From Octopus sinensis (Eukaryota): a stretch of 64,000 nucleotides of DNA. The translations under genes and the position numbers were made by a program. Below, piece after piece: positions 2,861 through 54,010 of this stretch (position 1 is the first letter of the stretch; every line of letters begins with the position of its first letter). The DNA is taken from contig NC_043006.1 of assembly GCF_006345805.1 (NCBI RefSeq), positions 34,596,001-34,660,000 of the forward strand, read 5' to 3'. The notes under the pieces are model-generated. The model saw only the letters and a list, made by a program, of their open reading frames with translations, was not told the DNA's origin and did no database searches.

Positions 2861-3783
2861 TAAAGAGTGAAATTATCTTTATCTAAGAACAACATTTCCC
2901 AATTAGGTAAATCAAAATTACAATCTCAGAATGTAATTTTCATAATTGGCCCCAAAGTGCTTTCTATATGAAGAATCATCATCATCATCATTTAACGTCT
3001 GTTTTCTATGCTGGCATGGGTTGGACAAAAAATATATAACAAAACTCAGCACCTCAAGTATTGTAACATACTCTTAGCTATGTGGTCAAGCAGAAGACAT
3101 CAGAGAGAAAAGTTTCCATGTTATTGCTTTGACTTGCTTAATCATTTAATGTCCTTCACATAGGGACTGTTCTTTTCGGCCATTCAAGGTCTTAGTAGAC
3201 ATCAATAAGACTATGATCTGATGATGAAGTCTAATAAGGCTGTAATATGTCTGGAATTGTCACCATGATTGCTTAAGATTAAACTCTTCTGTGACCATTA
3301 TCTTTGATTTTTTACTTGTTTCAGTCATTAGACTGTGGCCATGCTGGGGCACCGCCCTGAAGAATTTTTAGTCAAATGAATCGCACCACCCAGTACTTTT
3401 TTTTTTCAGTCTGGTGCTTGTCGATCTCTTTTGTCAACTTAAGTTATGGAGATGTAGATATGTAAAAACACCAATACTAGTTGTCAAGCGGTGGGACACA
3501 TACACACCATCGTCGTATTCGTTTAACGTCCACTTTCCTTGCTGGCATGCGTTGGATGGTCTGACTGGAGGCTGCACCAGGCTCCAGTCTGGTCTGGCAA
3601 GGTTTCTACAGCTGGATGCCCTTCCTAATGCCAACCACTCAGAGAGTGTAGTGGATGCCTTTTATGTGCCACCAGCACAGGAGCCATTCAGGGGTGGGGA
3701 CTGGCATTGACCACATTTGGATGGTGTTTTTTACATGTCACCGGCACGGGAGCCAGTCAGGGGGTACTGGCATTGACCCCCAC

Positions 3784-3830: not shown

Positions 3831-5651
3831 ACACACGACTGGCTTCTTTCAGTTTCCGTCTGAGGTTGCAGTAGAAGATAGCTGCCTAAGGTGCCATGCA
3901 GTGGGACTGAGCCCAGAACTATGTGGTTGGGTAGCAAACTTCTTACCACACAGCCACTTTAGCTACCTTTTATATAAACCTTTTCTGCAAAATCTTGGAC
4001 AGACTGTTAATAAGTCAACTTAAACAATTAATATAAAATACAGTTACTCTGTAAGACATACTAAGTATATAAGCAATTTATATATGTATATATATTCTAA
4101 TAATGAGGAACATATGAGCCCTCGACAGAAAAAAGTAGGCTTTCCCATATGTGTATCTGTCAAGGGTTTATATGCCCCATCATTAGACTACTTTTTTTAG
4201 TCATTGCAGAATGATCGCTATAAGCTTTAAGCTTATAAAAAAAAATACCATTATTATTATTTACAGAATTGTAAAGCTCAACACCGCTTAACAAAACTAT
4301 TTGCACCAAAAGTACAAAGTTTGTTTACAAAAACAACTAGGAACTAATATAGTTCTTCAATTTGACAAAAAGGAGCAGGCTGGTTCACTGGTGTAATCGG
4401 CAACACACTTAGATGTGTTAACAAAGAGATGTGGTTTCGACTCCCATGCATACAGGAAAGCCTAATTTTTTCTGTCAAGGGCTTATATGCCCCATTATTA
4501 GACTATTTTTCTAAGTCATGGTGATTGCTATAAGCTTTAAGCTTATAAAACAATACCATCATTATTATTTACAGAATTGCAAAGCTTGACACTGCTTAAC
4601 AAAACCATTAGCACCAAAAGCATATATACATATATATGGACTGATAAACATCTGAGTTTATAGAGGAAGTTTATGTACTCAACATATGAAACAAATTTAC
4701 AGTTCAAGAAGTTGAGGCTCCTTGAACTACAACTCTGATTTTTCAAGTTTTCAACTGCCTGACTAGCCCTTGTGCCGGTGGCATGTAAAAGCACCCACTA
4801 CACTCTTGGAGAGGTTGGCATTAGGAAGGGCATCCAGCTGAAGAAACTTTGTCAAATCAGATTGGAACCCGGTGCAGCCTTCTGGTTCACCAGTCCTCAG
4901 TCCAACCATCCAACCCGTGCCAGCATGGAAAGCAGACGTTAAACGATGACGACGATGATATAGTCATATCATTCGAACAATCAGAAATGTAAACCTGCAA
5001 ATTATAATTCACGATAGTTCTGCTTTTCACACACACACACACACAAACACACATACACATATATGCCATGTGTGTGCAAGCAACTAAAGCAAGCTGACAT
5101 TTGAGTTTACAGATGATATACAAACTAGAAAAGCAGAGATCAACATCTGTTTCACAGCAAGTAGAGGTAAACAGATGAAATAATAATAATAACGATTTCA
5201 AATTTTTGCTACAAAGGTAGCTTGGGGGGGGGATTAAGTCAATTACATTGACCCCAATGTGTAACTAGTACTTATTTAATCGACCCTGAAAAGATGAAAG
5301 GCAAAGTTGACCTCAGCGGAATTTGAACTCAGAACATAGTGGCAGACGAAATAATGCTAAGCGTTTCACCTGGTGTGCAAACAATTCTGCCAGCTCACCG
5401 CTTTAATAATAATAATAATTTCTACTCTGAGAACAAGGCCTTGAAAATTTTGGGGCAAAGGGGATAGTCAATTACATCGACCCCTGTGTGTAACTGGTAC
5501 TTATTTCATTGACACCGAAAGGATGAAAAGCAAAGTCAACCTCGGAATTAGAACTGAGAATGTAGCAGCAGATGAAATACTGCTAATAGTTTCACCTGGC
5601 ATGCTAACGTTTCTGTCAGCTCACCGCCTTAATAATAATAATAATAATAAT

Positions 5652-6900: not shown

Positions 6901-9104
6901 AGTATATGTCTATACAAGCATTTGATGACTATACACAAATCTTCTGTGTGGTTGTTCAATAAGAAATTGTCAAACCCTCATACGTTATCTAATGACAGGA
7001 GAGTCCATTATATATATATATGTGTGTGTGTATATATATATTTATATATATTCGTTTATTTGTTTCAGTCATTTGACTGTGACTATGCTGGAGCACTGCC
7101 CTTAGTCAAACAAATCAACCCCAGGATTTATTCTTTGTAAGTCTAGTACTTATTCTATCGGTCCCTTCTGCCGAACCGCTAAGTTACGGGGACGTAAACA
7201 CACCAACATCGGTTAAGCGATGGTGGTGGGGTCAAACACAGACATACAAACATACACACACTTACAATGGGCTTCTTTCAGTTTCTGTGTACCAAATCCA
7301 CTCACAAGGCTTTGGTTGGCCTGAGGCTATAGAAGAAGACACTTGCCCAAGGTGCCACACAGTGGAACTGAACCCAGAACAATGTGGTTGGTAAACAAGC
7401 TACTTACCACACAACCACTCCATCATCATTTAACATATGTCTTTCATGCTGGCATGGGTTGGACAGTTTGAACAGAGATAGCAAATTGGAGATCTGCACC
7501 AAGTTCCAGCCTGATTTGACTTGGTTTCTATGACTGAATGCCTTTCCTAACTAACAACTTTACAGTGTGCTGGGTGGTTTTACACGGTGCCGGCAGGGGA
7601 ATCTTTTTTATACATTGTGCCAGCAGAGGTGCTTTTACATGGCACCTACATGATCAATAGAAGTTAAGAAACCTTCCTCCAACTGAAGCTTATGGGTCTT
7701 GCCCCTTCTTCAACTAATTAATAGCAATAAATTACACACACACACACACAAACTGATATTTTGACCTGAGTAAAGCACCCTAAACACTCAGCAATGTACC
7801 TTCACTAAAAGAAAATGCAATAACACACTGGACAATGTAGCTCTGGATATACTATGCATGAATAAAAAGACAGAACAGGCACAGCTGATGGACTTTTAAC
7901 CTTAAACCTGCCCACTTAATGCAATTTGAGATCAAACAACAATACACAGCACATATCATATATACACACACACACACACATCATCATCATCATCATCTAA
8001 CATCCACTTGCTATGCCGGCATGAGCTGGATGATTCAACAGCATTCAGCAAGCCCCTGGGGCTGTGTCAAGCTCCCAGGTCAGCTTTGGCATGGTTTCTA
8101 TGGTTGGACAGGCTCTGTAATGCCAACTACTTTACAGTGTGTACAGGGTGCTTAAAGGCACCATAATTTCTCTATATCTTTCGATGTGTGAAAGACTTTT
8201 AGATCTTTTTAGAAAAGCAATGTGGGCCATTTCATGGAATGTCTGCTACTTTGACCTAGCAAAGTATAAATGACATCATTATAGGGTTTAATGATGATTA
8301 CTTTCTTCACATCAATTTTTAATGAGTAAGTTCTTTTTATGTTGTTGTTGTTGTTTTTAAAAATTATAATGACCTTTCACTAAAAGTAATTATTGTATTC
8401 GATCTTTTCCAAAAAGCAATAACAACACAAACACAAATAAAACAACACACATGGCTGTTTCTCTCAACGTCTTCAATGAATTAAATTCAATTTAAATAAG
8501 ACAGAAAAACAACTCTTAACGAATAATTTATGAAAGAAAAAATTAACAGCATCATCAACATGCTTGATAGCAAATAATGAACATTAAATACTCTGAAACA
8601 ACAAAACAAAAACAAGTATAATTAAAATTGTTATTTTGTTTTCAGTTGTTCTATATTTTCTGAATTTCAAAAACCATTATTGCTTTCCACTAATGTTTTA
8701 CTCAAACAATTTCTAGTAATATTTTTGTATTTTCCTGTAAAATAATGAGCTTTATCTAATTCTGAAGTACTTAGGTATTTAAAAAAAAGAATAACAAAAC
8801 AAAGAAAAAACTGTAGGTATTTATAATTGCTTGTAATATCATAGACATCATCTCATATTCCATAACTTCATTTTCAGCACCATCTAATGTATACATACAC
8901 ACACACGTGTACATACATGTGCTTGTAGATATTTATAGGTTTGGTGTTACAAATAGGAAAACCAGAACTTAAGAGTATATATAGATTCTGTGGAGGCGCG
9001 TGGCCTAGTGGTTAGGGTGTCAGCATCATGATTGTAAGATTGTGGTTTCGATTCTTGGACCGGGCGACGCGTTGTATTCTTCAGCAAAACACTCTCCTGT
9101 GTAT

Positions 9105-11119: not shown

Positions 11120-11865
11120 CATCATCATCATCGTCGTCGTCGTTTAACATCTGCTTTCCATACTGGCATGAGTTGGATGGTTTCACTGAGGGCTGGTGAG
11201 CCAGAAGGTTGCACCAGGCTCCAATCTGATCTGGCAAAGTTTCTACAGCTGGATACCTTTCCTAACGCCAAGCACTCCAAGAGTGTAGTGGGTACTTTTA
11301 TGTGCCACCGGCACAGGCAGTTCTGGCAACAACTATTTTCAAAAGGTAACTTTTATGTGATACATGCATGGGAGCCAGTCCAGCGGCACTGGCAACAACC
11401 ACACTCAAATCGTGTTTTTTCATGTGCCAGTAAGCAACAATCACGCTCGAATGATGATTTTTACATGCCACTTGCACGTGAGCCAATCAGTGGCCCTGGC
11501 AACGATCACACTTAGATGGTGCTTTTAACATTTCACTGGTACGAGTGTCAATCAGGCAGTACTGTCATCAGCCACGTCAGTGATTTTGATTTCACTTGCC
11601 TCAACAGGTCTTCACAAGCAAAGTTTGTTCAATGAATGAGGGGTACTCATAAGTGGGCTGGTTACACCCACTGGCATAGGTCACAGGTCTCACTTGGCTT
11701 GTTGGGTCTTCTCAAGCACAGCATATCTCCAAATGTCTCGGTCACTAGTCATTGCCCTGGTAAGGCCCAACGATCGAAGGTCATGCTTCACCACCTCATC
11801 CCAGGTCTTCCTGGGTTTACTTCTTCCACAGGTTCCCTCAACTGCTAGGGTGTGACACTTTTAAA
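11120..11865 (-). mobile_element. RTE LINE 3' fragment (ORF end + 3' UTR)
   Basis: Reverse complement of AVEGTCGRGKPRKTWDEVVKHDLR plus the (CAT)n-led tail. Confidence 0.85.
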
Positions 11866-13260: not shown

Positions 13261-15409
13261 AATGAACATAAATTGAGAGTGAAGAGCAGGAGATAGAAAA
13301 GGCATCTAGCAGCTGATAGTTGAGGAGGAGTGATGAGTGTGTGTGAGTGGAAGTAGTGTCAATAATATATCAAATGGCAATGAACCTGAACAGCGAGGTT
13401 TGATGACACAGATGTAATGGTTGTGGTGGTAGAAATCTTAATGGTTGTGATATAATAGCTACCGGGCTTGTGATAGTTGAAGTGGTGCTGATAGCAATAA
13501 AATGGTGCCGGTGGTGTTAGCATAGGAGCCATGGTTGTGGTGGTAGTAGTCACGGAAATGGTAGCAAGAAGTAGAAGCAATCACTCAACTAGGGAATATG
13601 ATTTTGCATGTTACATATGAGTTCGAGTGTATATGTGTGTGTATATGTGAGTGCAAGTGCATATATATGCATACATCTGATTTGTGGATTTATGAGTAGC
13701 AGTGTGTGCATATGAATGTAAGCATGACAGAGTAAATATATACAAGTCAGTGTGTATATGAGTGTAAGCTTGAATGTGTATATAAGTGTGTGTATACATA
13801 TGTGCCTGCATTGAAACGTGTTCAGCGCTGATTGTGTGAGTACATTCGTACATGATTGCTGGTATCTATTAAATTCTTCATTAACTCTGCCACACATCTG
13901 TCCTAAGCCAGGTCAAGAAATAAGGAAAGTTGGTCATAAGACTGGTACCGTTACTCTGAAAAGAGACTACTTCACAGCAGAAACCCCTATGAGCTTTCCA
14001 AACAAAGAGAACTAGCACGGATTAACCGTGAAGGGTTCGGATCAAAACTGAAAGGACATCCAGATCCTGATTGCCCAGGTTTTCCATACTGAACAAACCT
14101 TAAACATCAACACTTGGAACTAGCATGGGAGAGAAGGACTAATTCAACATGGATTGACCATGAAGGGTTCAGATCAAAACTAAAAGAACATCCAGATACT
14201 GATTGCCCAGGTTTTCCATACTGAACAAACCTTAAACATCAACACTTGGAATATCTGCACTTTATATCAAAGCAGAAAGCTTTGATATTAAGTCATTCAA
14301 GAAACAGCCAAATACACTTTGGACATACTGGGATGGAGTGTAATGAAAACTTGTAGCCCACTGCCATGAGGCTGGAGGAACCAGTTGACCATGTGTGTTA
14401 CTGTGATAAGAACAAGGACTGTGACGGAAGTTATCACAGGAGTAACAAGAGGAAGACAAAGAAAGACAAATGGATTAGGTGGGCCTTGGTGAAGGTGGTA
14501 TGCAAGTAACTAGTTCAGAGGAACAGAGGCCATTGTGGCAGCAAGGGAAAAGACAGACAGAGAAAAGAGTAAATCTATGTGCTAGTTTTTGCTAGTGGGT
14601 TAAAGTATGACCAAGGATGTTCGAGATGTGACAAGCTTGTTCTGAGCATCTAGAATTACAATGCTTAACGACTCCTTCTTTTTTTTAAGGAGGGTGTGAT
14701 GTAACAGTTATTAAATTATTTCTAGCAGGTCAAGTTACCATATGAATTCTATGGATTCTTGTCTTTGTACTGAGTTTGTGAGTGAATCAGTCGCCAATAA
14801 GTTGAATGGATCTCAGGTTTCTGTATGTCCACTTGCACGTATACAGTTTACATGTATGCTTGTGTATGTGTATATACATACATGAGTCCCACCCATGCCA
14901 GCATGGAAGGCAGACGCTAAATGATGATGTGTGTACACATGTATGTATTCATGTTAAGTGGACACAATTATTTATACATATGAATAGTCAGGACACTTTT
15001 GTAGATATAAGCTTTTCAAGTATAGAACTGTGTCCGTATCCTGTATGTTATGCATGGTTATTGGCCAGTTTGCAATGTGTACAAATACCTTTTTAATGTT
15101 TTGTTCGTGTTTGTCTAATAATTCAAATACATTATGTGTATATACCACCTAACTTCCTTGAATGCAATCATTACTGCAAATCTAATGCCTCTTTGCAAAA
15201 GCTACACAAGTTTTTCTGTAAATAGTTTATTTCTTAAACAAACCTGTTTTCAAAAAAATAAATAAATAAATAAAAATCGCCCATAAACAAAACACAAAAA
15301 ATTAACAATAATAAAAAAAATATAAAAAAATATCAAAACTAACAACTGCTTTGTACACAGTTTGTAATAAAAGGTTTTTACAGTCAAGTATATTCTCCAT
15401 TTAACACAC

Positions 15410-15518
15410 CTGAAACCCATTGCTCTAATGCAAATTCTATCAAACCAGTAACCATTAGTACACTTCTGTTTGCTGTGCTTCACCAAATATCTCTTTGCCA
15501 TCAATGGCCACCAACCCT
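15410..15518 (-). CDS. Candidate coding exon of unidentified minus-strand gene
   Basis: tgtag|AG...TTCAG|gtgtgt. Open frame GWWPLMAKRYLVKHSKQKCTNGYWFDRICIRAMGF; phase-2 end is compatible with the exon at 10339-10456. No family recognised. Confidence 0.3.
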
Positions 15519-15949
15519 CTACAATCGTTTACATGTAAGTTGAAAAGAACAGTGACATTGCTAAAGTGATTAATATGAAACCTTTATCTACCTGTGAAGG
15601 TGTTCCTGCATTAAGGAGAATGTATTTCAATTCTAACGAGAGTGAGTTGGGAAAGGTGTGAAAAGGAGAGTGGTTGAGTTTAATATTGGAGGTATCAGAA
15701 AATTGAAATGATGTAATTGTAAAAAGGTGAAAAGAGAAACACTTTTCTGCATGAATATATCTTTTATCAGGTGTTTGTTTTGGTCATTAGACTGTGGCCA
15801 TGCTGGGGCATCACCTTGAAGAATTTTAGTCAAACAAATCAACCTCAGTACTTATATTTTTAAGTCTGGTACTAATTACTAATTCTATTGGTCTCTTTTG
15901 CCAAACTGCTATGTGCGTGTGTGTATTATATATATATATATATATATAT

Positions 15950-16014
<65 letters not shown>

Positions 16015-16344
16015 CATAGGTGCAGGAATGGCTGTGTGTAAGTAGCTTGCTTCCCAACCACATGGGTTCCAGGTTCAGTCCAGTGGCATGGCACCTTGGG
16101 CAAGCGTCTTCTACTATAGCCTCAGGCCAACCAAAGCCTTGTAAGTGGATTTGGTAGATGGAAACTGAAAGAAGCCCATTGTATATATATATATATATAT
16201 ATGTATATGCGTTTACATCCCTGTAACTTAGTGGTTTGGCAAAAGTGACCGATAGAATAAGTACTAGGCTTACAAAGAATAAGTCCTGGGGTCGATTTGT
16301 TCAACAGAATTACAGATAGTATATATGGAATTTTGATCTACTGT

Positions 16345-18004: not shown

Positions 18005-18405
18005 TATATACCTGTCTGGCCCCCGTGCCGGTGACACGTAAAAGCACCATCCGTTTCGTGGCCGTTTGGCAGCTCTGTCTGGCCCCCGTGTTGGTGGCAC
18101 GTAAAAGCACCATCCGTTCGTGTCCGTTGCCAGCCTCGCCTGGCCCCGTGCCGGTGACACGTAAAAGCACCATCCGTTCGTGGCCGTTTGCCAGCTCTGT
18201 CTGGCACCTGTGCGGGTGGCACGTAAAAAGCACCCACTACACTCATGGAGTGGTTGGCGTTAGGAAGGGCATCCAGCCGTAGAAACACTGCCAGATCTGA
18301 CTGGGCCTGATGAAGCCTTCCAGCTTCACAGACCCCAGTTGAACCGTCCAACCCATGCTAGCATGGAGAACGGACGCTAAATGATGATGATGATGATGAT
18401 GATGA
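18005..18405 (+). mobile_element. RTE 3'-tail element (family B, representative copy)
   Basis: Nearly identical to the 3' UTR of the RTE at 62340-62962, ending (GAT)n. Other copies at about 590-785, 3506-3780, 4770-4960, 7420-7650, 7980-8160, 10775-10880, 21640-21780, 22740-22920, 27027-27445, 28490-28907, 54900-55050, 55780-55930, 56045-56300, 58855-59005, 60080-60420, 60845-60930. Confidence 0.88.
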
Positions 18406-24874: not shown

Positions 24875-26356
24875 TTACTTTACATACACACACATGCCAT
24901 ACACGAAACTTTTGGTCATTGAATTACTTCCCCGATTAAAAATTAAAGATACATATATATTCGTGTATTGAGTTCTATTCTGTTTGGTTCACTATATAGG
25001 GGAAGGTCGTTTTTGACTTTGAGAAGAAATATATTTTTATTTACGTTCACAAGCTTACAAAAACTATATCAGCGAAGCAAACGACCTTCTCTAAATGCAT
25101 TAAAAACATTGTAACAAAATCTGAACACTATTTCAGAAAATTATCATCGCTCTGTTTGAGAATATAAAAGACGAATTTAGATGGGGCAAAATGAGTCAGC
25201 CACGATAAGGTAAATTTGCCGCTTCAATTCTCCAGAATTACATTTGAAAACACAGTCATGTACATCAATATCCATTCTTAGACATCAGAAAGATCAGAAG
25301 TGCATAAGTTTAAGATATCTAGGTCAAATGATAGCGGGGGAAGAAAATGGCGCATATGAAATTAACGAAACTGGACTAGATAAAAAAAAAAACTCAACAT
25401 AAAATATTCTCTATAGCTTCTTCACGATCTGCTAGAGTGTCTCTCTTCATGATATATTTACACACCATGCAGTTAAAGAGAAGAAATTACTGAAATTAGT
25501 CATTACTCATTTACCCCATTTTAAGCACATTGTTTGACACTTGAAAATGATCAAATCAGACATTGGAGTGGGTAAAAACTGACTTGGAATCCAACAGAGA
25601 AGAAATATCGATTGTTAAACACCAAAAATTATCCAGATATTAGCAACCTCAAGTTGAAAAATTCCTTGGAAAAAAAAATTAAAGGCTCCAATCACCTGAC
25701 TATGTCCCAAACCCTAACCCTGAGTCCCTTAACTATGCTGATCAATTTTTACTCCTAGAGATTATGCAAAATTTACAATGTAATCATTTCAAACAGGTAG
25801 GGAGAAAATATCAAGAAACCAGAATTTACTTAATTTACCTAGGTTGCTAATTTTGTCCCCATGTCCTATACATAACTGGGGCGAAAGAAAAGAATACGCA
25901 CACCCGGTGTTTAGGGTTAGGGTTTTTGTTACGCCCAAAACGAGTGGTGTGTGTATTCTTTACCTCCGCCCGTAATTGGTGTGTTTATTGAATTTTTACA
26001 AGAGAGGTGACAGTGACTTCGAAGTTTTGGCCAATTAGCAAGCGAGTTTAAGATTACATACTATTAAACACTGAATAAATTAGTACAGCAAATATAATTT
26101 CCCCTATTTACGACGAAGGGTATCAAGCCGAAACTTCGAAGTCACTATCACCGTCTCGAGCTGGTAGAATTGTTACTACACCAGACAAAATGTTTAGCGG
26201 CATTTCGTGCTCTGAGTTCAAATTCCGCAGAGGCTGGCTTTGCCTTTCATCATTTCGAAGCCGATAAAATAAGTACAAGTTGAGTACTAGGGTCGATGTA
26301 ATCGACTTAAATCCTCTCCCGAACTTGCTGGCCTTGTGCCGGCCGATAACAGAAAA

Positions 26357-29300
26357 GGGTAAATTTTGAGACCTTCACTAAGAAAAAAAACCCAACTCGG
26401 ATTTTTTGCGTGGAATCAAGTACCCTGACCTCCTAACATACTGCAAACTCCTTATTTTTGTTCGGAGGAAAGGGAAATCGTACGAATGTACTTCCCAAGG
26501 ATGGGGGAATTTCCGAGGGTTCCACCTCGTGGTACTTGTCTATTGTCGTGGTCCCGGTTTCGCACACGCGAATTCGCGCGCGCCAGACGTAGGTACTCGA
26601 TACTCGAGATCCTACGAGGTGACTTGCGCATGCGCAGTGCAGAATTCGCGCATGCGCGTTAACCCCCCCCCCTAAAAAAAAAAAAAGGTGTTGGATTTCA
26701 CTAAAAATATATATGTGTGTGTGTGTGTGTGTGTGTATATAACATTTTCAATTTTACACAAAAAAATTACATAGTCGCTTTCCTCGCGGATTTACAGATA
26801 AATGAATTAATTACTATTTTACAGAATAAAATTAATGAATTAATTATATAAATTAAATAATTCTTGAAAATTAATTAATATTAATAATATTTTTTGAACA
26901 AAGTAAATAATTTATAAAACTTGGTTAATAATTTTTTTTACACAAACGCGAACGTATATAATTTGTGAAACTTTTTTTTTTCACAGACGTATATAATTTG
27001 GTAAACTTAATGAATTAATTTCTTCTCATCATCATCATCGTTTAACGTCCGTTCTCCATGCCAGCATGGGTTGGACGGTTCGACCGGGGATCTGGGAAGC
27101 CAGAAGGCTGCACCAGACTCCAGTCTTATCTGGCAATGTTTCTACAGCTGGATGCCCTTCCTAACGCCAACCACTCCGAGAGTGTAGTGGGTGCTTTTTA
27201 CATGCCACCCGCACAGGTGCCAGGCGAGGCTGGCAACGGCCACGGTCGGATTGGTGCCAGTCGAGGCGGCTCTGGCATCGGCCACGATTCGGATAGTGCT
27301 TTTTACGTACCACCAGTCCAGGGGTCCTGGCATTTGCCGGGTGTCACACTTGCCCCAACATGTCTTCGCAAGCAAAGGGGGTTGGCATGGGTGCCTGTCG
27401 TGGGATGAGGTTCGATATCAACTTCGCTTGCCTCAATAGGTCTTTGTGTATAAATGTATAAATTTTTCGCACTAAATTCTTTCCGTAGAATTTATCAAAA
27501 AACGCGCAAAATTATTCCGTAGAATTTATCAAATTAAAAAACGCAAAATTAATATATTTTTTGAAATTGCAAATTATTTAGAATATAAAACAAATGAAGT
27601 TAAATTTTAAAAATAAATGTCATATACTTATACTCTGTAAGGTGCTGTGTTCACACTTCAATTTACTATTTTCTAGAAATGTTGCTTTTCTAATTGAAAC
27701 AATTTTTCTCAATCTCCATTTAAAAGTCCATCATGTCTCTTGAGACATATCAAAATGAACAACTTTGAATTACGCGGCGGCGGTGGTGGTGTGAGGTTTT
27801 AATTTTTTTTTCTGATCTCTCTTTGCCCCCCTAGATGGAGGTGTGGTGGGGAGACAGATGAAAGATGTTTCATTCTCTGCTATATATGTATATATATATA
27901 TATATTTCTTAAACCTACACGATATAGTCTATAAATTTGGGATGTTTTTGAAAGATAATATATTTTGTCATCAGAATATATATACTTTCTCACACTACAA
28001 TTAAGATATATTTATTTTAAATCGTTCATCTTTTCCCGCGACAACAAAAATTGGGCGCGAAAATTTTTCTAAATATTAGCGGAATGAACAACTGAGATAA
28101 AGAGGGGGCAAAGAGAGATCAGAAAAAAAAAATTAGAACCTCACACCACACCGCCGCCGCGTAATTCAAAGTTGTTCATTTTGATATGTCTCAAGAGACA
28201 TGATGGACTTTTAAATGGAGATTGAGAAAAATTGTTTCAATTAGAAAAGCAACATTTCTAGAAAATAGTAAATTGAAGTGTGAACACAGCACCTTACAGA
28301 GTATAAGTATATGACATTTATTTTTAAAATTTAACTTCATTTGTTTTATATTCTAAATAATTTGCAATTTCAAAAAATATATTAATTTTGCGTTTTTTAA
28401 TTTGATAAATTCTACGGAATAATTTTGCGCGTTTTTTGATAAATTCTACGGAAAGAATTTAGTGCGAAAATTTTATACATTTATACACAAAGACCTGTTG
28501 AGGCAAGCGAAGTTGATATCGAACCTCATCCCACGACAGGCACCCATGCCAACCCCCTTTGCTTGCGAAGACATGTTGGGGCAAGTGTGACACCCGGCAA
28601 ATGCCAGGACCCCTGGACTGGTGGTACGTAAAAAGCACTATCCGAATCGTGGCCGATGCCAGAGCCGCCTCGACTGGCACCAATCCGACCGTGGCCGTTG
28701 CCAGCCTCGCCTGGCACCTGTGCGGGTGGCATGTAAAAAGCACCCACTACACTCTCGGAGTGGTTGGCGTTAGGAAGGGCATCCAGCTGTAGAAACATTG
28801 CCAGATAAGACTGGAGTCTGGTGCAGCCTTCTGACTTCCCAGATCCCCGGTCGAACCGTCCAACCCATGCTGGCATGGAGAACGGACGTTAAACGATGAT
28901 GATGATGAGAAGAAATTAATTCATTAAGTTTACCAAATTATATACGTCTGTAAAAAAAAAAAAGTTTCACAAATTATATACGTTCGCGTTTGTGTAAAAA
29001 AAATTATTACCAAGTTTTATAAATTATTTACTTTGTTCAAAAAATATTATTAATATTAATTAATTTTCAAGAATTATTTAATTTATATAATTAATTCATT
29101 AATTTTATTCTGTAAAATAGTAATTAATTCATTTATCTGTAAATCCGCGAGGAAAACGACTATGTAATTTTTTTGTGTAAAATTGAAAATGTTATATATA
29201 CACACACACACACACATATATATTTTTAGTGAAATCCAACACCTTTTTTTTTTTTTAGGGGGGGGGGGTTAACGCGCATGCGCGAATTCTGCACTGCGCA

Positions 29301-29591
29301 TGCGCAAGTCACCTCGTAGGATCTCGAGTATCGAGTACCTACGTCTGGCGCGCGCGCGCGAATTCGCGTGTGCGAAACCGGGACCACGACAATAGACAAG
29401 TACCCCGTAATTCATTCAACAATAAAGAAAACAAAAAAAAAAATTCCAATGATTCCGGGATAGGCGCGGGAGTCCGGTTCTTCATCCATTTTCCGACCCA
29501 AAATAAGGAGTTTGCAACATATTAGGTCAGGGTACTTGATTCCACCCAAAAAATCAGAGGTTTTCCTTAGTAAAAATATCAAAATTTACCC
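26357..29591. mobile_element. Foldback-type element / giant inverted repeat
   Basis: Diverged outer TIRs beginning GGGTAAATTTTGA. Inner arms 26531-27830 and 28104-29404 are ~99% reverse-complementary around a 273-bp spacer. Flanked by direct repeat AGAAAA (26351-26356, 29592-29597). No transposase. Confidence 0.75.
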
Positions 29592-30879
29592 AGAAAAATT
29601 GACATAAAACCAGTGACATATCTGAATGTATATGTGTTTGTGTGTATGTCTACTTACATTCATATACGTAAATTCGAATTAAGTACAAAGTACCATAGAA
29701 CAAGTTGCCTATGGTTAAAATGTGTGACACAGATTCAATTTTCTCGTTGAAGACATTACTTTCCACTCATTGACGTTGTTATTGAGGAAAGTCACGGATG
29801 TTATAACTTACCAGTTCCGTTTCTTTTAATGGAAACATTATCACGTATGACGAAGCAAAACAACACGGCCAACATTAATGGGTCTCTATCAATTTACATC
29901 CTTCCTCTAGCTATCCCTCTCTCTCTATACCCCCCTCTGACACTGCACATTTGTCTCATTCTACCTCTCTGTCTTTCTCTTCCCCCTCACACTCCGGTTT
30001 TATCTTATCCTATCTCACCACTTTCACATTCACTCTTCGCCTTCCTTCAACCTACCTCTTTCTTTGACTCTATCTCTCTGATGTCCCTATCTTTCCTTTC
30101 ACCCTATCGCCTCTTTTTACCTTTCTCTCTATTCATCCATCCTGTCACCCTTATCTTTATAACTCACCTATCACTCATTTTGGCGCCCATATCGTTCATT
30201 CGAAAGAGGGCCGTGAAAAATTACTTGGCATTTGTTGAGTTGAAAGATGAGACAGATGACATCAAACAACCGACTCATTTCTGAATTTTGGTCTTTTATT
30301 AAAAGCATTTTAAACTTTCGTTTTTGCTACTTGATACAATCCAGGTGGATTAGAGTAACGGTTATAGTTTCATATTGATGAGTCATCGAGACACAATTCG
30401 TAACGAATCATGAAATGAAATACAAAAAATAAATACACAAACTTAATTTATTCTTTTATTGGCCACAAGGGCTAATATATATTATACATAAAAGACAATA
30501 CAAGACAATACAAAATGTTTTCCCATTCGTGCAAACAACAGAGAATGGAAATAATAATAAATAGAAGTCAGATTACAAATGTACTCCAATATTTAACTTT
30601 ATTCTGAGTTTAAATACTCTCAAGGGCTAATAGAAAAAGTGAAATAAATGTGCAGGGAAAAATGCAAAAGTATTAAATATTATATATTTGTACAAAATAA
30701 TTTGAGATACACAACATGCTCCGTGAACTAACAAGCTTACTCGTCGTGCTTGATACGGCAGTTATATCTCCCTCGCAGTACATTCTTCCATCTTTAAAAA
30801 AGAAGAATACATTGGATAAGTAGTCGTGGCTTGGAAAGAAAAGGTAAAAAAAGAAAAACGATGATATTATTCTTTTCTA

Positions 30880-31270
30880 CTCTAGGCACAAGGCACGAAA
30901 TTTTGGGGGGAGGGGACCAGTCGATTACACCGACCCCACTACGCAACTGATACTTAATTCATCGACCCCGAAAGGATGAAAAGCAAAGTCAACCTCGGCG
31001 GAATTTGAACTCAGAACATAAAGACAGGCGAAATACCTATTTCTCTACTACCCACAAGGGGCTAAACACAGAGAGGACAAACAAGGACAGACAAACGGAT
31101 TAAGTCGATTATATCGACCCCAGTGCGTAACTGGTAATTACTTAATCAACCCCGAAAGGATGAAAAGCAAAGTCGACCTCGGCGGAATTTGAACTCACAA
31201 CGTAACGGCAGACGGAATACCGCTAAGCATTTCGCCTGGCGTGCTAACGTTTCTGCTAGCTCGCCGCCAT
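30880..31270 (-). mobile_element. Tandem pair of tRNA-derived SINE family C
   Basis: Shared core GAGTTCAAATTCCGCCGAGGTCGACTTTGCTTTTCATCCTTTCGGGGTCGAT. Other copies at about 5190-5630(-, two), 26160-26340(+), 49360-49470(-), 63650-63820(+). Confidence 0.8.
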
Positions 31271-32101: not shown

Positions 32102-32168
32102 TACTAAAAGAACCCAAAATACAGAAACCAAAGGAAAAAAGAAGTTGAAATCATACTTCAAAGACGAA

Positions 32169-34361
32169 ATGGAAAATTTACCGCATCCAAAAGACCTAGA
32201 CTTTAATCATGAAAATCTAGCCGCAGCATGGAAAAAGTGGAAAAAAGAATTCAATCTCTTTTTGATAGCAACAGAAAGTGACATGAAGCCAGACAAAGTA
32301 AAAACTTCAATGTTTTTAACTTGCATCGGTTCCAAAGGCCGAGATATCCATTCCACACTGGATTTCGATTCACCCGACGAAGAAATGAACCTTCAGACAG
32401 TAATCGAAAAATTCGATGCATATTGTGAACCCAGGAAAAACATAACTTTCCTAAGACACAAATTCTTCACATGTGGACAAGCGGAACATCAAAAATTCGA
32501 TGAGTACGTAGTAGAGTTGCGCCAAAAGGCACAACAGTGCGAATTCGGCAACCTCACAGACAGTCTCACCAAAGATATTCTGATATGTGGAATCAGAGAC
32601 ATGAGATTAAGAGAAAGATTATTGAGAGAACCAAATTTAGACCTACAAAAAACAATTCAAGCAGGTCAGAGTGCAGAGCAAACACGACTCCAATCAAGGA
32701 TGCTAAATGCCACATCCGAAACAAGAGATAACGAAATCTCGAGGGTATATAGTCAACACGACAGAAAAGGCGCCAAAACTCAAATAACCCGCCATATGCA
32801 ATCCAGACATCAAAACGAACAAGGCGGAAGTGACAGAAAGCCCGCGAAATTTCAAGCGCCAAGTCAACACTACGTCACTAACTGTCACTATTGTGGTTAT
32901 AATCACAAAAGAAATAAATGCCCAGCATTTCACAAGACATGTGAAAAATGCGAGAAACAAGGACACTATGCAAAAATGTGCAAATCAAGAAAATTTGTAC
33001 ATAAAGTAGAGATACATACCGACGATGAATCAGATGACGATACACATGCACTCGAAATGATCACTGCAAATAATTCCCGCGTGCACAAAATCGAAAAGTT
33101 CAAGACTCCAAAAGACATTTGGACGGTCGAACTAAAAGTGAACAACTCGAATGTAACATTCAAAATAGATACAGGAGCAGACGTAACCGTACTGCCATTC
33201 AGAGAATATAGAAATATAATTCCAAAACCACAACTGCAAAAAACTTCAACTCGATTATCAGCTTATAATAACACAGCTATAAAAGTGCTAGGAAAATGCA
33301 CAGCAGTCATTAAATACAAAGAATTATCAAAGCAAATAAAATTCATTGTTGCAAAAACAAACTCGCACGCAGTTATAGATGCAAAGACAGCTAAAGATCT
33401 GAACCTGATTCAGAGAATTTCAAAAATAAATTCGTCGAACACAAACGACATATTAGAAAAATATGAAGACTGTTTCGGAGAAATCGGCACTTTGTCAATA
33501 ACACATCATATCACAGTGGATCCACAAATAACTCCTGTAATTCATCCACCAAGATCGGTTCCTTTTTCTATAAAAGAAAAACTCAACAAAGAATTAAAAA
33601 GAATGACAGAATTAGATATCATAAAACCTGTTAGTGAACCTACAGACTGGGTAAATTCCCTAGTCATCGTTGAAAAAGCCAACGGAAAACTCCGACTCTG
33701 TTTAGACCCCAAGAATCTAAACAAAGCCATAAAAAGGCAACATTTCAAACTCCCTACAGCGGAGGACATTTTTGCACAAATGCATAACCCTAAATATTTT
33801 TCAAAACTTGATGCATCTAATGGATACTGGCAAATTCCAGTTGACGAAGAAAGCTCCCATCTTTTAACGTTCAACACACCTTTTGGAAGGTATCGCTTCA
33901 CACGACTACCCTTTGGAATTCACAGCGCCAGTGAAGTTTTCCAAAAAGAAATTTCAAAAATAATAGAGGGCATAGAAGGAGCAAGAAATTCACAGGATGA
34001 CATCATAATCTGGTCCAACACTTTAGAAGAACACACAAATAGACTACAACAAGTTTTCGATCGAATCCGAAAGCACGGATTAAAGTTAAATAAATCAAAG
34101 TGTATCTTCTATGAATCACAAATCAAGTACCTTGGGCATATATTAACCAGCGAAGGGATAAAACAAGATCCAACCAAGGTACAAGCAATCATTCACATGC
34201 CACTGCCAACAAGTAAAAAAGAATTACAAAGATTCCTAGGTATGACAAATTACCTATGTAAATTTTTATCTAATTACTTACTCCGAAGTCACAGCACCAT
34301 TGCGCCAGCTTCTACAGTGACACGTTATGGTCATTCGACAAACCACAAATCGAAGCAATAA
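32169..34361 (+). CDS. Gypsy Gag-protease-RT polyprotein (frameshifted near 34280-34320)
   Basis: Two Cys/His knuckles (CHYCGYNH...C; CEKCEKQGHYAKMC), protease FKIDTGADVT, RT motifs LRLCLDPKNLN, LDASNGYWQ, FTRLPFGI, SQDDIII, KYLGH. First ATG at 32169. Confidence 0.93.
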   Translation: MENLPHPKDLDFNHENLAAAWKKWKKEFNLFLIATESDMKPDKVKTSMFLTCIGSKGRDIHSTLDFDSPDEEMNLQTVIEKFDAYCEPRKNITFLRHKFFTCGQAEHQKFDEYVVELRQKAQQCEFGNLTDSLTKDILICGIRDMRLRERLLREPNLDLQKTIQAGQSAEQTRLQSRMLNATSETRDNEISRVYSQHDRKGAKTQITRHMQSRHQNEQGGSDRKPAKFQAPSQHYVTNCHYCGYNHKRNKCPAFHKTCEKCEKQGHYAKMCKSRKFVHKVEIHTDDESDDDTHALEMITANNSRVHKIEKFKTPKDIWTVELKVNNSNVTFKIDTGADVTVLPFREYRNIIPKPQLQKTSTRLSAYNNTAIKVLGKCTAVIKYKELSKQIKFIVAKTNSHAVIDAKTAKDLNLIQRISKINSSNTNDILEKYEDCFGEIGTLSITHHITVDPQITPVIHPPRSVPFSIKEKLNKELKRMTELDIIKPVSEPTDWVNSLVIVEKANGKLRLCLDPKNLNKAIKRQHFKLPTAEDIFAQMHNPKYFSKLDASNGYWQIPVDEESSHLLTFNTPFGRYRFTRLPFGIHSASEVFQKEISKIIEGIEGARNSQDDIIIWSNTLEEHTNRLQQVFDRIRKHGLKLNKSKCIFYESQIKYLGHILTSEGIKQDPTKVQAIIHMPLPTSKKELQRFLGMTNYLCKFLSNYLLRSHSTIAPASTVTRYGHSTNHKSKQ

Positions 34362-34375
34362 AAAAGCTAAAAGAA

Positions 34376-36109
34376 ATGATTACCAGAAAACCAGTGCTAC
34401 AATTTTATGATCCAGATCTACCAATAAAAATAACTACAGATGCTAGTAAGCATGGGCTCGGAGCGATACTTGAGCAGAAACACAACGAAAGATGGCTACC
34501 TGTTTCGTTTGCATCTCGTGCAACAACTCAAGCGGAACAAAACTACTGTCCGATAGAGAGCGAAGCTCTCAGTATAGTTTTCGCATGCAAGAAATTTCAT
34601 CAGTTTATATACGGAACTCATTTCAGAATCGAAAATGACCATAAACCGTTGAAGCAAATATTTAAAAAATCGATCACTAAATGCCCCCCCAGAATCCAAA
34701 GATTTCTACTAACATTACAAAGATATGATTTTGACCTAAACCACATACCTGGTAAAGAATCAATTGTTGCAGATACCCTATCACGTGCATACCTTGAGCA
34801 AAATACTCCAGAAGTATCAGACGAAGATATGAAATCGCACATTCATGCAGTAATAAAAAATTACCCCATAACCGACACTAAATTAAACGAGTATAAAGAA
34901 GCCACTGCAGACCCGTCTCTACAGACACTCGTCACATATACAAGAACAGAATGGCCCCCAAAAGACAAAATACCAATAAACATCAAACCATTCGTATCCG
35001 TTCGTGATGAAATATCAATCGTCAATGGTCTCGTTCTAAAAGGTTCAAGAATAATTGTACCTAAGTCATTACGTAGAGAAGCTCTACAGGAAATACATAC
35101 CGGACACATGGGTATCGAAAAATGCATAGAGAGAGCGAAGGAATGTATATACTGGCCCGGCATTAACGCTCAAATCAAAGACATGATTAACACATGCTCA
35201 TACTGCATTGACTACAAAAATCAACAAGCAGCCGAACCACTAATAAATCATGAAATACTACTACACCATGGGCCAAAGTGGGTACAGACGTATTTTACCT
35301 GTCTGGAAATTCGTATGTCACAATTATTGACTATACAACAAGATTTTTTGATCTACACGAAATAAATGATTGCCAGTCAAAAACCGTAATCAAAAAATTA
35401 AAAGAAACTTTTGCTAAATTCGGAATTCCGCAAACAGTTGTAAGTGACAACGGTCCAGAATTCAATTCGGCTGAATTCAAAAAATTTGCAAAAAATTGGC
35501 ATTTTCATCACACGAAGACAAGCCCGCATTATCATCAAGCGAATGGCATGGTTGAGAGAAATATACAGACAAAAAAAGACGCTAAAAAAGGCATTCAAAA
35601 GTGACGAAGAACCTCAGTTAGCGCTCGCGCATTACGCACGACTCTAATTACAAAATGGTGCACCATCCCCTGCAAATCAAATAATGAATAGAACATTGCG
35701 AACAAATCTCCCAAACATACTACACGACAAAATTGGTATCAGGCCTCACGAAAAGAAGAAATCAAACATTACAACAGAACTCCCAGAGTTAAAACCACAC
35801 GACACGGTTAGAATTAAGTTTAACAACAATTGGTTTAGAAGGGGCAAAATAATTAAAAAACTAGAGCAACCTCGTTCATACTTAGTAATAACAGAGGAAG
35901 GTAATACAGTCAAACGAAATAGACAACATATTCTTAAAACAAACGAACACGTTCGCATAACAGAAGAAATAGATTATGAAAATATATTTCTAAAGTCAAC
36001 AAACACGCATGAAAAAACAAAAACAGCACAACTACAGAATTCAACACTACAAAATAATAAAACCACAAAAAGTGGACGACGAATAATTATTCCCTGTAGA
36101 TACAGATGA
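34376..36109 (+). pseudogene. Gypsy RNase H + integrase, interrupted by small indels
   Basis: RNase H TDASKHGLG...ENDHKPL; integrase HHCC (HTGH...CSYC) and D,D,E motifs (GTDVF, VSDNGPEF, NGMVER) spread over three frames. Frameshifts near 35260, 35570 and 35630. Confidence 0.92.
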
Positions 36110-52788: not shown

Positions 52789-52952
52789 ATGGTAAATGGC
52801 GCTCTAAGTAGTTCGTCTTTTGCAGCGATGTCAGCATGTTTGGAAGACAGTCGAAATGTATCGGGTTACCACCACAAGAAGACATGGTCCATGTTGTATG
52901 CCGAAAGATTGAAGAATCTAGGAAGGTTCACGCTGTATCTTAATGTCGACAG
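52789..52952 (+). CDS. UBE3D: UBE3D-like E3 ubiquitin ligase, coding exon 1 (in-frame ATGs at 52789, 52828, 52891)
   Basis: Open frame ending ...MLYAERLKNLGRFTLYLNVD-AG|GTTTAT. The phase-2 donor joins exon 2 in frame (AG|G = Arg). The segment resembles the UBE3D N-terminal strand (human VFLEVRGQLQSALLIL, recalled from memory). Start codon and donor are less certain than for exons 2-3. Confidence 0.65.
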
Positions 52953-54010
52953 GTTTATATGATTTTCATTATTCTCCATCGTTAACTCAAGGTACATAGA
53001 TATATTTCTCCAATTTTTATCGCACACCGTAGAACAACTAATTTTGTTTTTATTGTATAAATGATCATTGTGATGAAAATAATAGTAGATTATTAATTAA
53101 TTATCATGAGTGTCTTAAAAATAACAATAACATTCCACTCACAATATTTATAATTCAGTTAAGACTTTTCTTTTATTTATGTATGTTTCAATGAATAAAG
53201 AATTACATAAAAATGCATATAGTAAGTAAATTGATATAATACATGGAAATATCCGGTGAAACCGAATTAGTGTCGAAATCTTTAGTATAAATAGTTTTCT
53301 TCTAACTATATAGTGTAATCAGAACACGATGTGAGGTTTATATGACTTTATACTGTGTCTGGCAGCATGATTAATTTTGAGTAAGTTTGTGAAAATTAAA
53401 TAGTATTTTTATCATCAGAATTACTATTATTGGCAGGAGAAGCTGAGCTTTGGACTAAATATCCCTTCAAAGACTTTTAGTTCTCTTCGTTCTGGCTTAA
53501 AACCCGCGGGCTTTTGATTTAGTCTCTAAACCAAATCGTTCCGTAACAATGCGGTGCGCCGCGGATTTTTAAAACTGCAATTTAAGGTCTTTCAAAATCC
53601 ACACTACTTGAGCCTTATGAAAATGTGTTACTTATAATGTCTGGGAGGGTTTTTTGGTAACTTTAAAACTGTTTTTAAAGAATTTCCAATGTGTAGTGCG
53701 CTACTAATTTTTTTTACTTGATTTCCACTGAGTCAAAGAATGGTTCTCAACCATTTTTTACTTATGAACCTCTGATATCTATTTTACTCTACTGGACTCT
53801 CATATCCGTTCAGTCTTTCATCTTTTACTTGCTCGAGTCATTTGAATGCGGCCATTCTGGGGTACCGCCTTGAAGGGTTTTAGTCGAACAAACGATCCCA
53901 GGACTTAATTTTTAAAGCCTGCTACTTATTCTATACACCAACACCGGTTGTCAAGCGGTGGTCGGAGACAAACACAGACACCAAATATGCACACACCTAT
54001 ATATAATATA

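What the first reader, a model, noticed from the sequence alone, without database searches (positions are those of the whole stretch)
26357..29591. 3.2-kb foldback element: old outer TIRs, freshly homogenised 1.3-kb inner arms with a mirrored LINE-tail insertion
Outer ends (GGGTAAATTTTGA...GGAATCAAGTACCCTGACC...GCAAACTCCTTATTT) are clearly diverged, with indels. The inner arms (26531-27830 / 28104-29404) differ by only about six substitutions and some repeat-length changes. A 420-bp RTE 3' fragment sits at mirror positions in both arms (27027-27445 / 28490-28907), so it inserted once and was then copied. This implies arm-to-arm gene conversion or fold-back repair after insertion. A 6-7-bp direct repeat (C)AGAAAA flanks the unit, and there is no coding capacity. 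It may be a non-autonomous foldback/Mutator-like family with self-templated TIR maintenance, and it can form a cruciform or 1.3-kb dsRNA.
Basis: partly seen in the sequence, partly recalled or inferred. Interest (0 to 1): 0.72.

Follow-up and report, generated by a model that had tools for sequence, protein, structure and literature searches.

The report
Octopus transposon copy with young internal palindrome
This is an old, non-coding copy of a cut-and-paste transposon in an octopus genome whose interior recently gained two mirror-image 1.3-kb copies of unrelated DNA; it is a real and tidy example of a known kind of rearrangement, not a new kind of element.

Summary
The unit at 26357-29591 has imperfect 100-110-bp terminal inverted repeats (TIRs; 12 substitutions and 3 indels in 100 aligned columns). 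It has a 6/7-bp target-site duplication, (C)AGAAAA. Inside are two 1.3-kb inverted arms differing by 7-8 substitutions plus 7 run-length indels. Each arm carries the same 419-bp LINE 3' fragment at mirror positions.

- The window is from an octopus.
- A relative of the element lies in Octopus vulgaris locus L019. It shares the TIRs (77-82%), the sequences just outside both arms, and the 273-bp 'loop' (76%). It has no trace of the arms.
- The 61/84 bp between the TIRs and the arms are not inverted repeats.

So the arms are not the homogenised inner part of old long TIRs. They are low-copy foreign DNA added to an old family copy and duplicated in inverted orientation around the original interior. 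A single fold-back or template-switch repair event after the LINE insertion is the likeliest cause. Gene conversion, a nested palindromic unit and mis-assembly remain possible. A Mutator affinity is not supported. The whole genome was not searchable, so the history rests on two copies. Interest is modest.

The parts
26211..26356 (+). Old SINE copy that received the insertion. Its 3' end (..GCCTTGTGCC..CAGAAAA) is cut by the element just before the (ATT)n tail.
   Evidence: about 25 other copies in the window and in O. vulgaris loci. Copies of the closest subfamily end ..GCCTTGTGCCTAnAnTAGAAAnnATTATTATT; the joined flanks read ..CAGAAAA|ATTGACATAAAA.
26350..26356 (.). Left copy of the target-site duplication: AGAAAA at 26351-26356, or CAGAAAA at 26350-26356.
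   Evidence: chance 0.2-0.8%.
26357..26466 (+). Left terminal inverted repeat of the transposon family (GGGTAAATTTTGAGACC...GGAATCAAGTACCCTGACC...TGCAAACTCCTTATTTTTG).
   Evidence: It is 77-82% identical to both TIRs of the L019 relative.
26467..26527 (+). Left subterminal family sequence, not an inverted repeat of the right side. Its end, AATTTCCGAGGGTTCCACCTC, resembles the family terminus.
   Evidence: no similarity to 29408-29491; 26508-26528 matches L019 15981-16001 at 20 of 21 positions.
26528..27830 (+). Left arm of the young palindrome: low-copy foreign DNA with no homologue in the L019 relative.
   Evidence: Searches give arm identity. Searches find only microsatellite or chance hits elsewhere.
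26526..26675 (.). CpG-dense, promoter-like module at the outer end of the left arm, with two GCGCATGCGC decamers (26626, 26648).
   Evidence: 20 CpG per 150 bp, o/e 1.56 against 0.65 for the window; the window's only four decamers are here and in the mirror module; 0.03 expected.
27027..27445 (-). 5'-truncated LINE 3'UTR and (GAT)n tail carried inside the left arm.
   Evidence: The tail-proximal 231 bp are 87% identical to the 3' end of the LINE at window 61510-62963 and 95-96.5% identical to O. vulgaris copies in L017.
27831..28103 (+). Spacer ('loop'): original internal sequence of the transposon family, not palindromic.
   Evidence: 27869-28068 matches L019 15046-15257 at 76%, E = 2e-37, in the same orientation as the left TIR; nhmmer aligns 27858-28102; the two halves are not complementary.
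28104..29407 (-). Right arm, the inverted copy of the left arm.
28489..28907 (+). Mirror copy of the LINE 3' fragment, with 2 substitutions against the left copy.
29251..29400 (.). Mirror CpG-dense module, with GCGCATGCGC at 29274 and 29296.
29408..29491 (+). Right subterminal family sequence ((T)AATTCATTCAAC...CCAATGATTCCG).
   Evidence: 29403-29457 matches L019 16055-16103 at 71%, E = 7e-4. In L019 this lies only about 60 bp from the counterpart of 26508-26528.
29492..29591 (-). Right terminal inverted repeat.
29592..29597 (.). Right copy of the target-site duplication: AGAAAA, or 29591-29597 CAGAAAA.

Best explanation
The unit is an old copy of a non-autonomous cut-and-paste (TIR) DNA transposon family of octopuses.

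Family features:
- imperfect TIRs of 100-130 bp starting GGTAAAWTT;
- a 6- or 7-bp target duplication;
- subterminal copies of the terminal motif;
- a short AT-rich interior.

Proposed history:
1. The copy inserted into the tail of an older SINE.
2. Much later its interior was rebuilt. About 1.3 kb of low-copy DNA unrelated to the family came to lie on both sides of the surviving 273 bp of original interior, as mirror-image copies. This DNA holds a CpG-rich module, AT-rich sequence and an already inserted, 5'-truncated LINE tail.
3. The most likely route is one break-repair or replication event. A DNA end folded back or switched template, copied the 1.3-kb segment in reverse, and was rejoined without homology.
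4. Since then the arms have gathered 7-8 substitutions and some repeat-length changes.

What is shown and what is inferred:
- Shown: the anatomy, the target duplication, the family relative, the absence of the arms from that relative, the family origin of the spacer, and the single LINE insertion that predates the copying.
- Inferred: the fold-back or template-switch mechanism, that it happened in place after transposition, and the ages. On the O. vulgaris repeat clock of PMC13282606 the arms date to under about 1 My and the TIRs to at most about 18 My. The TIR figure is an upper bound, because TIRs may have been imperfect at insertion.

The element has no transposase and no evident function. 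If transcribed it would give a 1.3-kb hairpin.
For: - Anatomy and identity contrast: (Fisher p = 7e-10).
- Target duplication and paralogous empty site.
- Octopus origin: the ORF in the LINE tail hits only O. vulgaris proteins, and the window's repeats match O. vulgaris loci at 85-96.5%.
- Family relative at L019 about 14853-16226: TIRs 77-82%, spacer 76% with E = 2e-37, and left and right subterminal matches that are about 60 bp apart in L019.
- Both TIRs here share a 15-bp gap relative to both L019 TIRs, a subfamily mark.
- No homologue of the arms in L019, in the rest of the window or in 143 kb of O. vulgaris DNA.
- The 61/84-bp segments and the spacer halves are not inverted repeats, so both arm edges are sharp.
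- No target duplication of 5 bp or more around the palindrome.
- About 60 bp present in L019 between the two abutting sequences are missing here. Insertion with deletion at a break fits this better than transposon integration.
- Differences between arms are evenly spread and mostly transitions.
- A comparable process, inverted duplication of internal sequence during break repair, is described for Galileo '2RT' copies (PMC3573991).
Against: - Only two family copies could be compared, and their internal order differs. In L019 the spacer homologue lies left of the 'AATTTCCGAGG..CCACCTC' block; here it lies right of it. The ancestral layout is therefore uncertain.
- No microhomology is visible at either arm/spacer or arm/flank junction.
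- A random template switch does not by itself explain why the duplicated tract ends within 1-2 bp of where family sequence resumes on both sides. That fits run-off copying to a DNA end, or insertion of a ready-made palindromic unit.
- The source of the 1.3-kb segment is unknown.
- The host genome could not be searched.
Confidence: 0.55

Rival explanations
1. The element is one foldback transposon with roughly 1.5-kb arms. The LINE tail entered one arm, and arm-to-arm gene conversion (or break repair templated by the other arm) then homogenised the inner 1.3 kb and copied the insert across, leaving the outermost 170 bp unconverted.
For: - The arms are 99.4% identical while the ends are 88% identical.
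- The mirrored insert proves that one arm was copied from the other.
- TIR-templated repair that extends or equalises long TIRs is documented for Galileo (PMC3573991).
Against: - The arms are not contiguous with the TIRs. The 61/84 bp between them show no inverted similarity, and no decayed palindrome is detectable inside the spacer (the proximal 70 bp are only marginal, 9 of 500 shuffles).
- The relative in L019 has the TIRs, both abutting segments and the spacer, but no arms. Long arms are therefore not a family trait.
- Conversion needs pre-existing inverted homology, and there is no evidence for any.
Confidence: 0.12
2. Nested or captured unit. The 2.9-kb palindrome (arms plus spacer) was formed elsewhere and entered the old copy as one piece. 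It could be an independent foldback-type element, or a linear snap-back fragment ligated into a break.
For: - Both outer arm edges coincide within 1-2 bp with the points where family sequence resumes. That is expected if a ready-made unit with identical ends was inserted.
- The arm ends are CpG-rich and carry repeated short palindromes, rather like transposon ends.
Against: - There is no target duplication of 5 bp or more. Only a self-complementary CG or an offset CGT is seen, both trivial.
- The spacer is family sequence about as diverged from L019 (76%) as the TIRs are (77-82%). This suggests it belonged to this old copy from the start.
- No second copy of the arms was found in 207 kb.
- About 60 bp of backbone are missing at the site.
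Confidence: 0.2
3. Assembly or library artefact: a fold-back chimeric read or a missed hairpin adapter created a false inverted duplication.
For: Near-identical inverted arms are the typical signature of such chimeras. Most indel differences between the arms lie in homopolymers, where long reads err.
Against: - The palindrome is internal to the window, with a 273-bp asymmetric spacer that is homologous to a relative's interior.
- The two sides continue into different family sequences, diverged TIRs and a matching target duplication.
- The arms differ by 6 transitions and 1 transversion.
- The SMRTbell adapter is not present. The best local score of 15 is reached by 7 of 344 tiles of the window, and the maximum elsewhere is 17.
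Confidence: 0.05
4. The 1.3-kb segment is itself mobile. Either it inserted twice in opposite orientation on each side of the spacer, or it moved within the molecule by a replicative route that leaves two inverted copies.
For: Discrete arm boundaries on all four sides.
Against: - The segment has no terminal repeats and no target duplications, and no other copy was seen in 207 kb.
- The spacer has the same orientation relative to the left TIR as in L019, not inverted.
- Two hits 273 bp apart by a rare element are improbable.
Confidence: 0.05

Closest known systems
Galileo '2 recombinant TIR' copies (P superfamily, Drosophila; Marzo et al. 2013, PMC3573991)
   Same: - Non-autonomous DNA transposon copies about 2-3 kb long, mostly made of inverted arms.
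- Internal sequence duplicated in inverted orientation by break repair.
- A 7-bp target duplication is possible here.
- The arms of one copy are 98-100% identical.
   Different: - In Galileo the duplicated tract is contiguous with the TIR and extends it. Here 61/84 bp of non-repeated sequence separate the TIRs from the arms.
- The duplicated DNA is foreign to the family.
- No transposase or THAP link could be tested.
Drosophila Foldback (FB) and other foldback elements (Tetris, nematode Tm1)
   Same: Large inverted arms, a small centre and no coding capacity.
   Different: - FB arms are terminal and built of tandem subrepeats, with a 9-bp duplication.
- The arms here are internal, unique sequence, and absent from the one relative found.
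Inverted duplications made by fold-back priming or replication template switching (MMBIR/FoSTeS-type events; palindromes with a short asymmetric spacer)
   Same: Two near-identical inverted copies around a short unique spacer, sharp edges, no target duplication, and loss of a few tens of bp at the site.
   Different: No junction microhomology is visible. The duplicated tract ends exactly at the family/foreign boundary.
Host-sequence capture by TIR elements (Pack-MULE-type acquisition)
   Same: Low-copy, promoter-like and repeat-bearing host-like DNA sits between transposon ends.
   Different: - No source locus is known.
- The captured DNA is present twice, in inverted orientation.
- The target duplication is 6/7 bp, not 9-11 bp.
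Palindromes kept uniform by arm-to-arm gene conversion (for example, sex-chromosome palindromes) and hairpin-RNA loci born from inverted duplications
   Same: Arms over 99% identical around a unique spacer, with the potential to give long double-stranded RNA.
   Different: The scale is 1.3 kb, there are no genes in the arms, there is no evidence of long persistence, and no expression data exist.

Membership tests
Class II TIR DNA transposon, non-autonomous copy | Terminal inverted repeats at both ends | tested here: met
   26357-26466 vs 29492-29591 give 88 matches in 100 aligned columns. The same termini occur in L019.
Class II TIR DNA transposon, non-autonomous copy | Target-site duplication, with an empty site recoverable | tested here: met
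   AGAAAA or CAGAAAA, chance 0.2-0.8%. The joined flanks continue the 3' end of a SINE, as seen in its other copies; this second line of support is modest.
Class II TIR DNA transposon, non-autonomous copy | Other copies of the family in the genome | tested here: met
   One relative in 143 kb of O. vulgaris DNA: L019 14853-16226. No genome-wide count was possible.
Class II TIR DNA transposon, non-autonomous copy | A transposase, or a known autonomous partner that would fix the superfamily | not testable with these tools
   No ORF over 89 aa lies outside the LINE piece. The host genome could not be searched.
Foldback (FB-type) element | Long arms that are the termini of the element and make up most of it | tested here: not met
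   The long arms start 171 and 184 bp inside the ends and are separated from the TIRs by non-repeated sequence. They are absent from the relative.
Mutator / MULE | Target duplication of 9-11 bp (own knowledge) | tested here: not met
   The longest flank identity is 7 bp.
P superfamily (Galileo-like) | Target duplication of 7-8 bp, and a THAP-domain transposase in autonomous copies | tested here: inconclusive
   A 7-bp reading (CAGAAAA) is possible only if the last C of the right TIR is given to the duplication. The transposase is not testable.
MITE | Short (under about 600-800 bp), high copy number, TIRs and a target duplication | tested here: inconclusive
   The backbone without the arms is 628 bp (171 + 273 + 184). 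The whole unit is 3235 bp. Copy number is unknown: two copies in 207 kb.
LINE 3' fragment (reader: RTE) | Homology to the 3'UTR and tail of a LINE with a reverse-transcriptase ORF, truncated at the 5' end | tested here: met
   matches the 3' ends at window 61510-62963 and L017 9964-10315; other copies continue upstream. One search shows a LINE ORF C-terminus at 11738-11818. RVT_1 in a related fragment.
LINE 3' fragment (reader: RTE) | Placement in the RTE clade by RT phylogeny | not tested
   Only the microsatellite tail, a common RTE trait (PMC9115989), points that way.
Hairpin-RNA / long dsRNA locus | Transcription through both arms, with small RNAs or A-to-I editing | not testable with these tools
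   Only the folding potential and promoter-like CpG modules are known.

The most novel reading that the evidence does not exclude
The palindrome is a newly born hairpin-RNA locus. Each outer arm end holds a CpG-island-like module with two GCGCATGCGC (NRF1/Ewg-type) motifs. Each module acts as a promoter, so the locus is transcribed into a 1.3-kb perfect duplex that feeds the small-RNA pathway or acts as a strong ADAR substrate in an animal known for heavy RNA editing. Its near-identity would then be maintained by selection or conversion, not by youth alone.
Probability: 0.06. Interest if true: 0.6.

Novelty: new member of a known kind. Interest (0 to 1): 0.27.

Why it matters
The locus is a clean natural record of how a dead transposon copy can be rebuilt by break repair into a kilobase-scale palindrome. 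The mirrored LINE tail serves as a built-in time stamp: insertion first, copying second. It also documents an apparently unclassified TIR family shared with O. vulgaris. The practical lesson for repeat annotation in octopus genomes is that long 'TIRs' found by structure-based tools can be secondary inverted duplications, not family termini. If the locus is transcribed it would be one of the longest perfect RNA duplexes a cell could make, which is of some interest in cephalopods. As it stands it is an instance of known processes, not a new mechanism.

Tried and rejected
1. Looking for the element's ORFs in the protein collections.
- Exact look-ups of five window ORFs found nothing.
- The 89-aa ORF across the left end had no word-sharing candidate.
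- These negatives are weak. The same index also missed an Argonauta E3D-like protein that is 78% identical to a window exon.
- One search timed out.

2. Scans for the TIR core TGGAATCAAGTACCCTGA.
- Metagenome contigs gave 11 hits and bacterial/archaeal genomes 5. Viral contigs gave none, and neither did a scan for the arm end.
- BLAST showed the 11 metagenome matches are 18-22-nt chance matches. The 5 prokaryotic hits were not BLAST-checked; their number and their hosts fit chance.

3. I first read the 419-bp insert as a discrete SINE with its own 5' end. More copies showed the homology continues upstream, so I rejected that reading.

4. Rfam gave no tRNA or other family in 25000-31000, only sub-threshold miRNA-like hits.

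5. A target duplication around the inner palindrome or around the LINE piece: none of 5 bp or more around the palindrome, and only a single 5-bp match around the LINE piece.

6. Hidden inverted similarity in the 61/84-bp segments and in the spacer: none.

7. Similarity between the arm ends and family sequence (the L019 segment between the two abutting blocks, or the TIRs): none beyond a shared 9-mer, CAAGTACCC, reached by 61 of 1000 shuffles.

8. SMRTbell adapter at the arm/spacer junctions: not present.

9. Whether the element lies in an intron of the UBE3D-like gene: it does not. Exon 1, with the start codon, is at 52789, about 23 kb downstream.

10. Searching paper texts for repeat sequences found nothing relevant.

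11. An intact target duplication for the L019 copy was not evident by eye.
Full report
**What is there.**
The layout from left to right is:

| Part | Coordinates | Notes |
|---|---|---|
| Left TIR | 26357-26466 | 88 of 100 aligned columns identical to the right TIR, 3 indels |
| Left unmatched segment | 26467-26527 (61 bp) | no inverted similarity to the right one |
| Left arm | 26528-27830 | 1289 matches, 8 mismatches, 7 short run-length indels against the right arm; 814 nt perfectly complementary |
| Spacer | 27831-28103 (273 bp) | not palindromic |
| Right arm | 28104-29407 | inverted copy of the left arm |
| Right unmatched segment | 29408-29491 (84 bp) | |
| Right TIR | 29492-29591 | |

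- The difference in identity between ends and arms is not chance (Fisher p = 7e-10).
- The arm differences are six transitions and one transversion, spread evenly. They look like mutations, not read errors.
- A 419-bp retroposon piece lies at mirror positions, 27027-27445 (-) and 28489-28907 (+). Arm identity runs unbroken across its junctions.
- The unit is flanked by AGAAAA, or CAGAAAA under a one-base shift. Six-base flank identity arises by chance in 0.2-0.8% of random placements in this window.
- No ORF over 89 aa lies outside the retroposon piece.
- As RNA the palindrome would fold at -2423 kcal/mol against about -687 for shuffles.

**Whose genome, and what the mirrored piece is.**
- The ORF that happens to lie in the mirrored piece hits only 'hypothetical predicted proteins' of Octopus vulgaris.
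- Seven O. vulgaris loci fetched through those proteins (L017-L023, 143 kb) share the window's interspersed repeats at 85-96.5% identity.
- A UBE3D-like gene has exons at 52789-52956, 56637-56972 and 59364-59660. It is 75-88% identical to the Argonauta hians protein. The window is therefore from an octopus, O. vulgaris or a near relative.
- The tail-proximal 231 bp of the mirrored piece match the 3' end of a LINE in the same window. That LINE has an ORF ending at 62211, roughly 62-bp tandem repeats in its 3'UTR, and a (GAT)n tail at about 62955. Identity is 87%, and 95-96.5% to O. vulgaris copies.
- I first thought the piece had its own 5' end. More copies show the homology continues upstream and, in one window copy, into a LINE ORF C-terminus.
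- The RTE clade was not tested. A microsatellite tail is typical of RTE (PMC9115989).

**It is an insertion.**
Just left of the unit lies an old SINE copy (26211-26356). About 25 other copies were collected. Copies of the closest subfamily end ...GCCTTGTGCCTAnAnTAGAAAnn(ATT)n. With one repeat copy removed, the joined flanks read ...GCCTTGTGCC..CAGAAAA|ATTGACATAAAA. The unit therefore sits at the start of the SINE's tail. Together with the flank duplication, this is a paralogous empty site, of modest strength.

**A relative, and what it shows.**
One of the O. vulgaris loci holds a relative of the element: L019, OX597840.1, at about 14853-16226.
- Its two TIRs match those here at 77-82%.
- Both TIRs here share a 15-bp gap relative to both L019 TIRs, a subfamily mark.
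- The 273-bp spacer here (27869-28068) matches L019 15046-15257 at 76% (E = 2e-37), in the same orientation relative to the left TIR.
- The last 21 bp before the left arm (26508-26528) match L019 15981-16001 at 20 of 21 positions.
- The first 50 bp after the right arm match L019 16055-16103 (E = 7e-4).
- In L019 these last two blocks are only about 60 bp apart.
- Nothing in L019, in the rest of the window or in the other loci resembles the non-LINE parts of the arms, apart from microsatellites.

Three conclusions follow. The family's real TIRs are the diverged 100-130-bp ends. The spacer and both sequences abutting the arms are family sequence. The arms are an addition of low-copy foreign DNA.

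The model of one long old TIR with a freshly homogenised inner part is not supported.
- The arms are not contiguous with the TIRs. The 61/84-bp segments show no inverted similarity under four scoring schemes.
- The spacer shows no decayed palindrome. Only a marginal patch appears, reached by 9 of 500 shuffles.
- The relative lacks the arms.

What the mirrored LINE tail does prove is the order of events: the LINE inserted once, then one arm was copied from the other.

**How the arms arose.**
The data fit best with one inverted duplication during break repair or replication (fold-back priming or template switching).
- The arm edges are sharp.
- The palindrome has no target duplication of 5 bp or more.
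- About 60 bp of backbone present in L019 are missing.
- The arms are uniformly 0.5-0.6% diverged.

A comparable process, repair that copies internal sequence in inverted orientation, is described for Galileo '2RT' copies, whose arms are 98-100% identical (PMC3573991).

Two points weigh against a simple version of this. No junction microhomology is visible. The duplicated tract also ends within 1-2 bp of where family sequence resumes on both sides, which suits run-off copying to a DNA end or insertion of a ready-made palindromic unit. That rival gets about 0.2, gene conversion of pre-existing arms about 0.12, two insertions of a mobile segment about 0.05, and artefact about 0.05.

The artefact is unlikely for four reasons:
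- the spacer is asymmetric and homologous to a relative;
- the two sides run into different family sequence and a matching target duplication;
- the arms differ by transition-biased substitutions;
- no SMRTbell adapter is present.

**Ages (rough, inferred).**
The O. vulgaris repeat clock of PMC13282606 equates a JC distance of 0.09 with about 25 My.
- Arm-to-arm JC of 0.006 gives under about 1 My.
- TIR-to-TIR JC of 0.13 gives at most about 18 My. This is an upper bound, because TIRs may have been imperfect at insertion.

**Classification.**
The element is a non-autonomous class II TIR element of unknown superfamily.
- A 6/7-bp duplication argues against Mutator.
- A 7-bp reading would fit the P superfamily but is not forced.
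- It is not a foldback element in the strict sense, because its long arms are internal.
- The genome could not be searched. Scans of the metagenome, bacterial/archaeal and viral collections gave no real relative. The history therefore rests on two copies whose internal order differs.

**Verdict.**
It is a new member of a known kind and of modest interest.

Noticed in passing
window 26526-26675 and 29251-29400: The outer 150 bp of each arm are the two most CpG-dense 150-bp stretches in the 64-kb window (20-21 CpG, o/e about 1.6 against 0.65 overall). They hold the window's only four GCGCATGCGC decamers (0.03 expected). This is an NRF1/Ewg-type palindromic motif (own knowledge), so each module looks like a captured promoter fragment.
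   Followed up: partly
window 59784-60017: A second, unrelated young palindrome: 117-nt arms, zero spacer, 99% complementary, flanked by (GT)n and (CA)n, about 120 bp downstream of UBE3D-like exon 3. No other copy in 207 kb.
   Followed up: partly
window 52789-52956, 56637-56972, 59364-59660 (+): The first three coding exons of a UBE3D-like gene (Pfam HECT_2, E = 8.5e-22), 75-88% identical to the Argonauta hians protein. The element lies about 23 kb upstream of its start codon.
   Followed up: yes
L019 14853-16226 (O. vulgaris OX597840.1): The relative has a roughly 500-bp (TA/CA)n expansion (15420-15925) and a roughly 50-bp direct repeat (15015-15063 and 15919-15967). Next to its right TIR it also has an internal mini-copy of the termini (15976-16098). 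The family therefore has rearrangement-prone subterminal repeats of its terminal motif.
   Followed up: partly
window 32145-36109 (+): A Ty3/gypsy-type LTR retrotransposon pol region (RVT_1, RNase H, integrase zinc-binding domain) with frame breaks.
   Followed up: no
window 61510-62963 (+): A LINE 3' end: the RT C-terminal ORF, then about seven tandem units of roughly 62 bp in the 3'UTR, a conserved 170-bp end and a (GAT)n tail running into (AT)n. Many 5'-truncated copies are scattered through the window, for example 18167-18396, 4771-4958 and 11128-11850.
   Followed up: partly
window 2457-2862 and 7049-7436: Two copies of a roughly 400-bp interspersed repeat in inverted orientation, 84-86% identical and 4.2 kb apart. 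The same repeat is very abundant in the O. vulgaris loci at about 85-87%.
   Followed up: no
window 25879-25971 and 26006-26152: Two short hairpins just upstream of the element (38-nt arms at 76%; 26-nt arms at 92%). The first gives sub-threshold Rfam miRNA-like hits (27 bits against a gathering score of 62), probably chance.
   Followed up: no
tool behaviour: The word-indexed protein search returned 'no candidate' for a UBE3D exon, although the full HMMER search found a 78%-identical protein sharing many 5-mers. Negative results from that index, including the one for the element's own ORF, carry little weight.
   Followed up: yes
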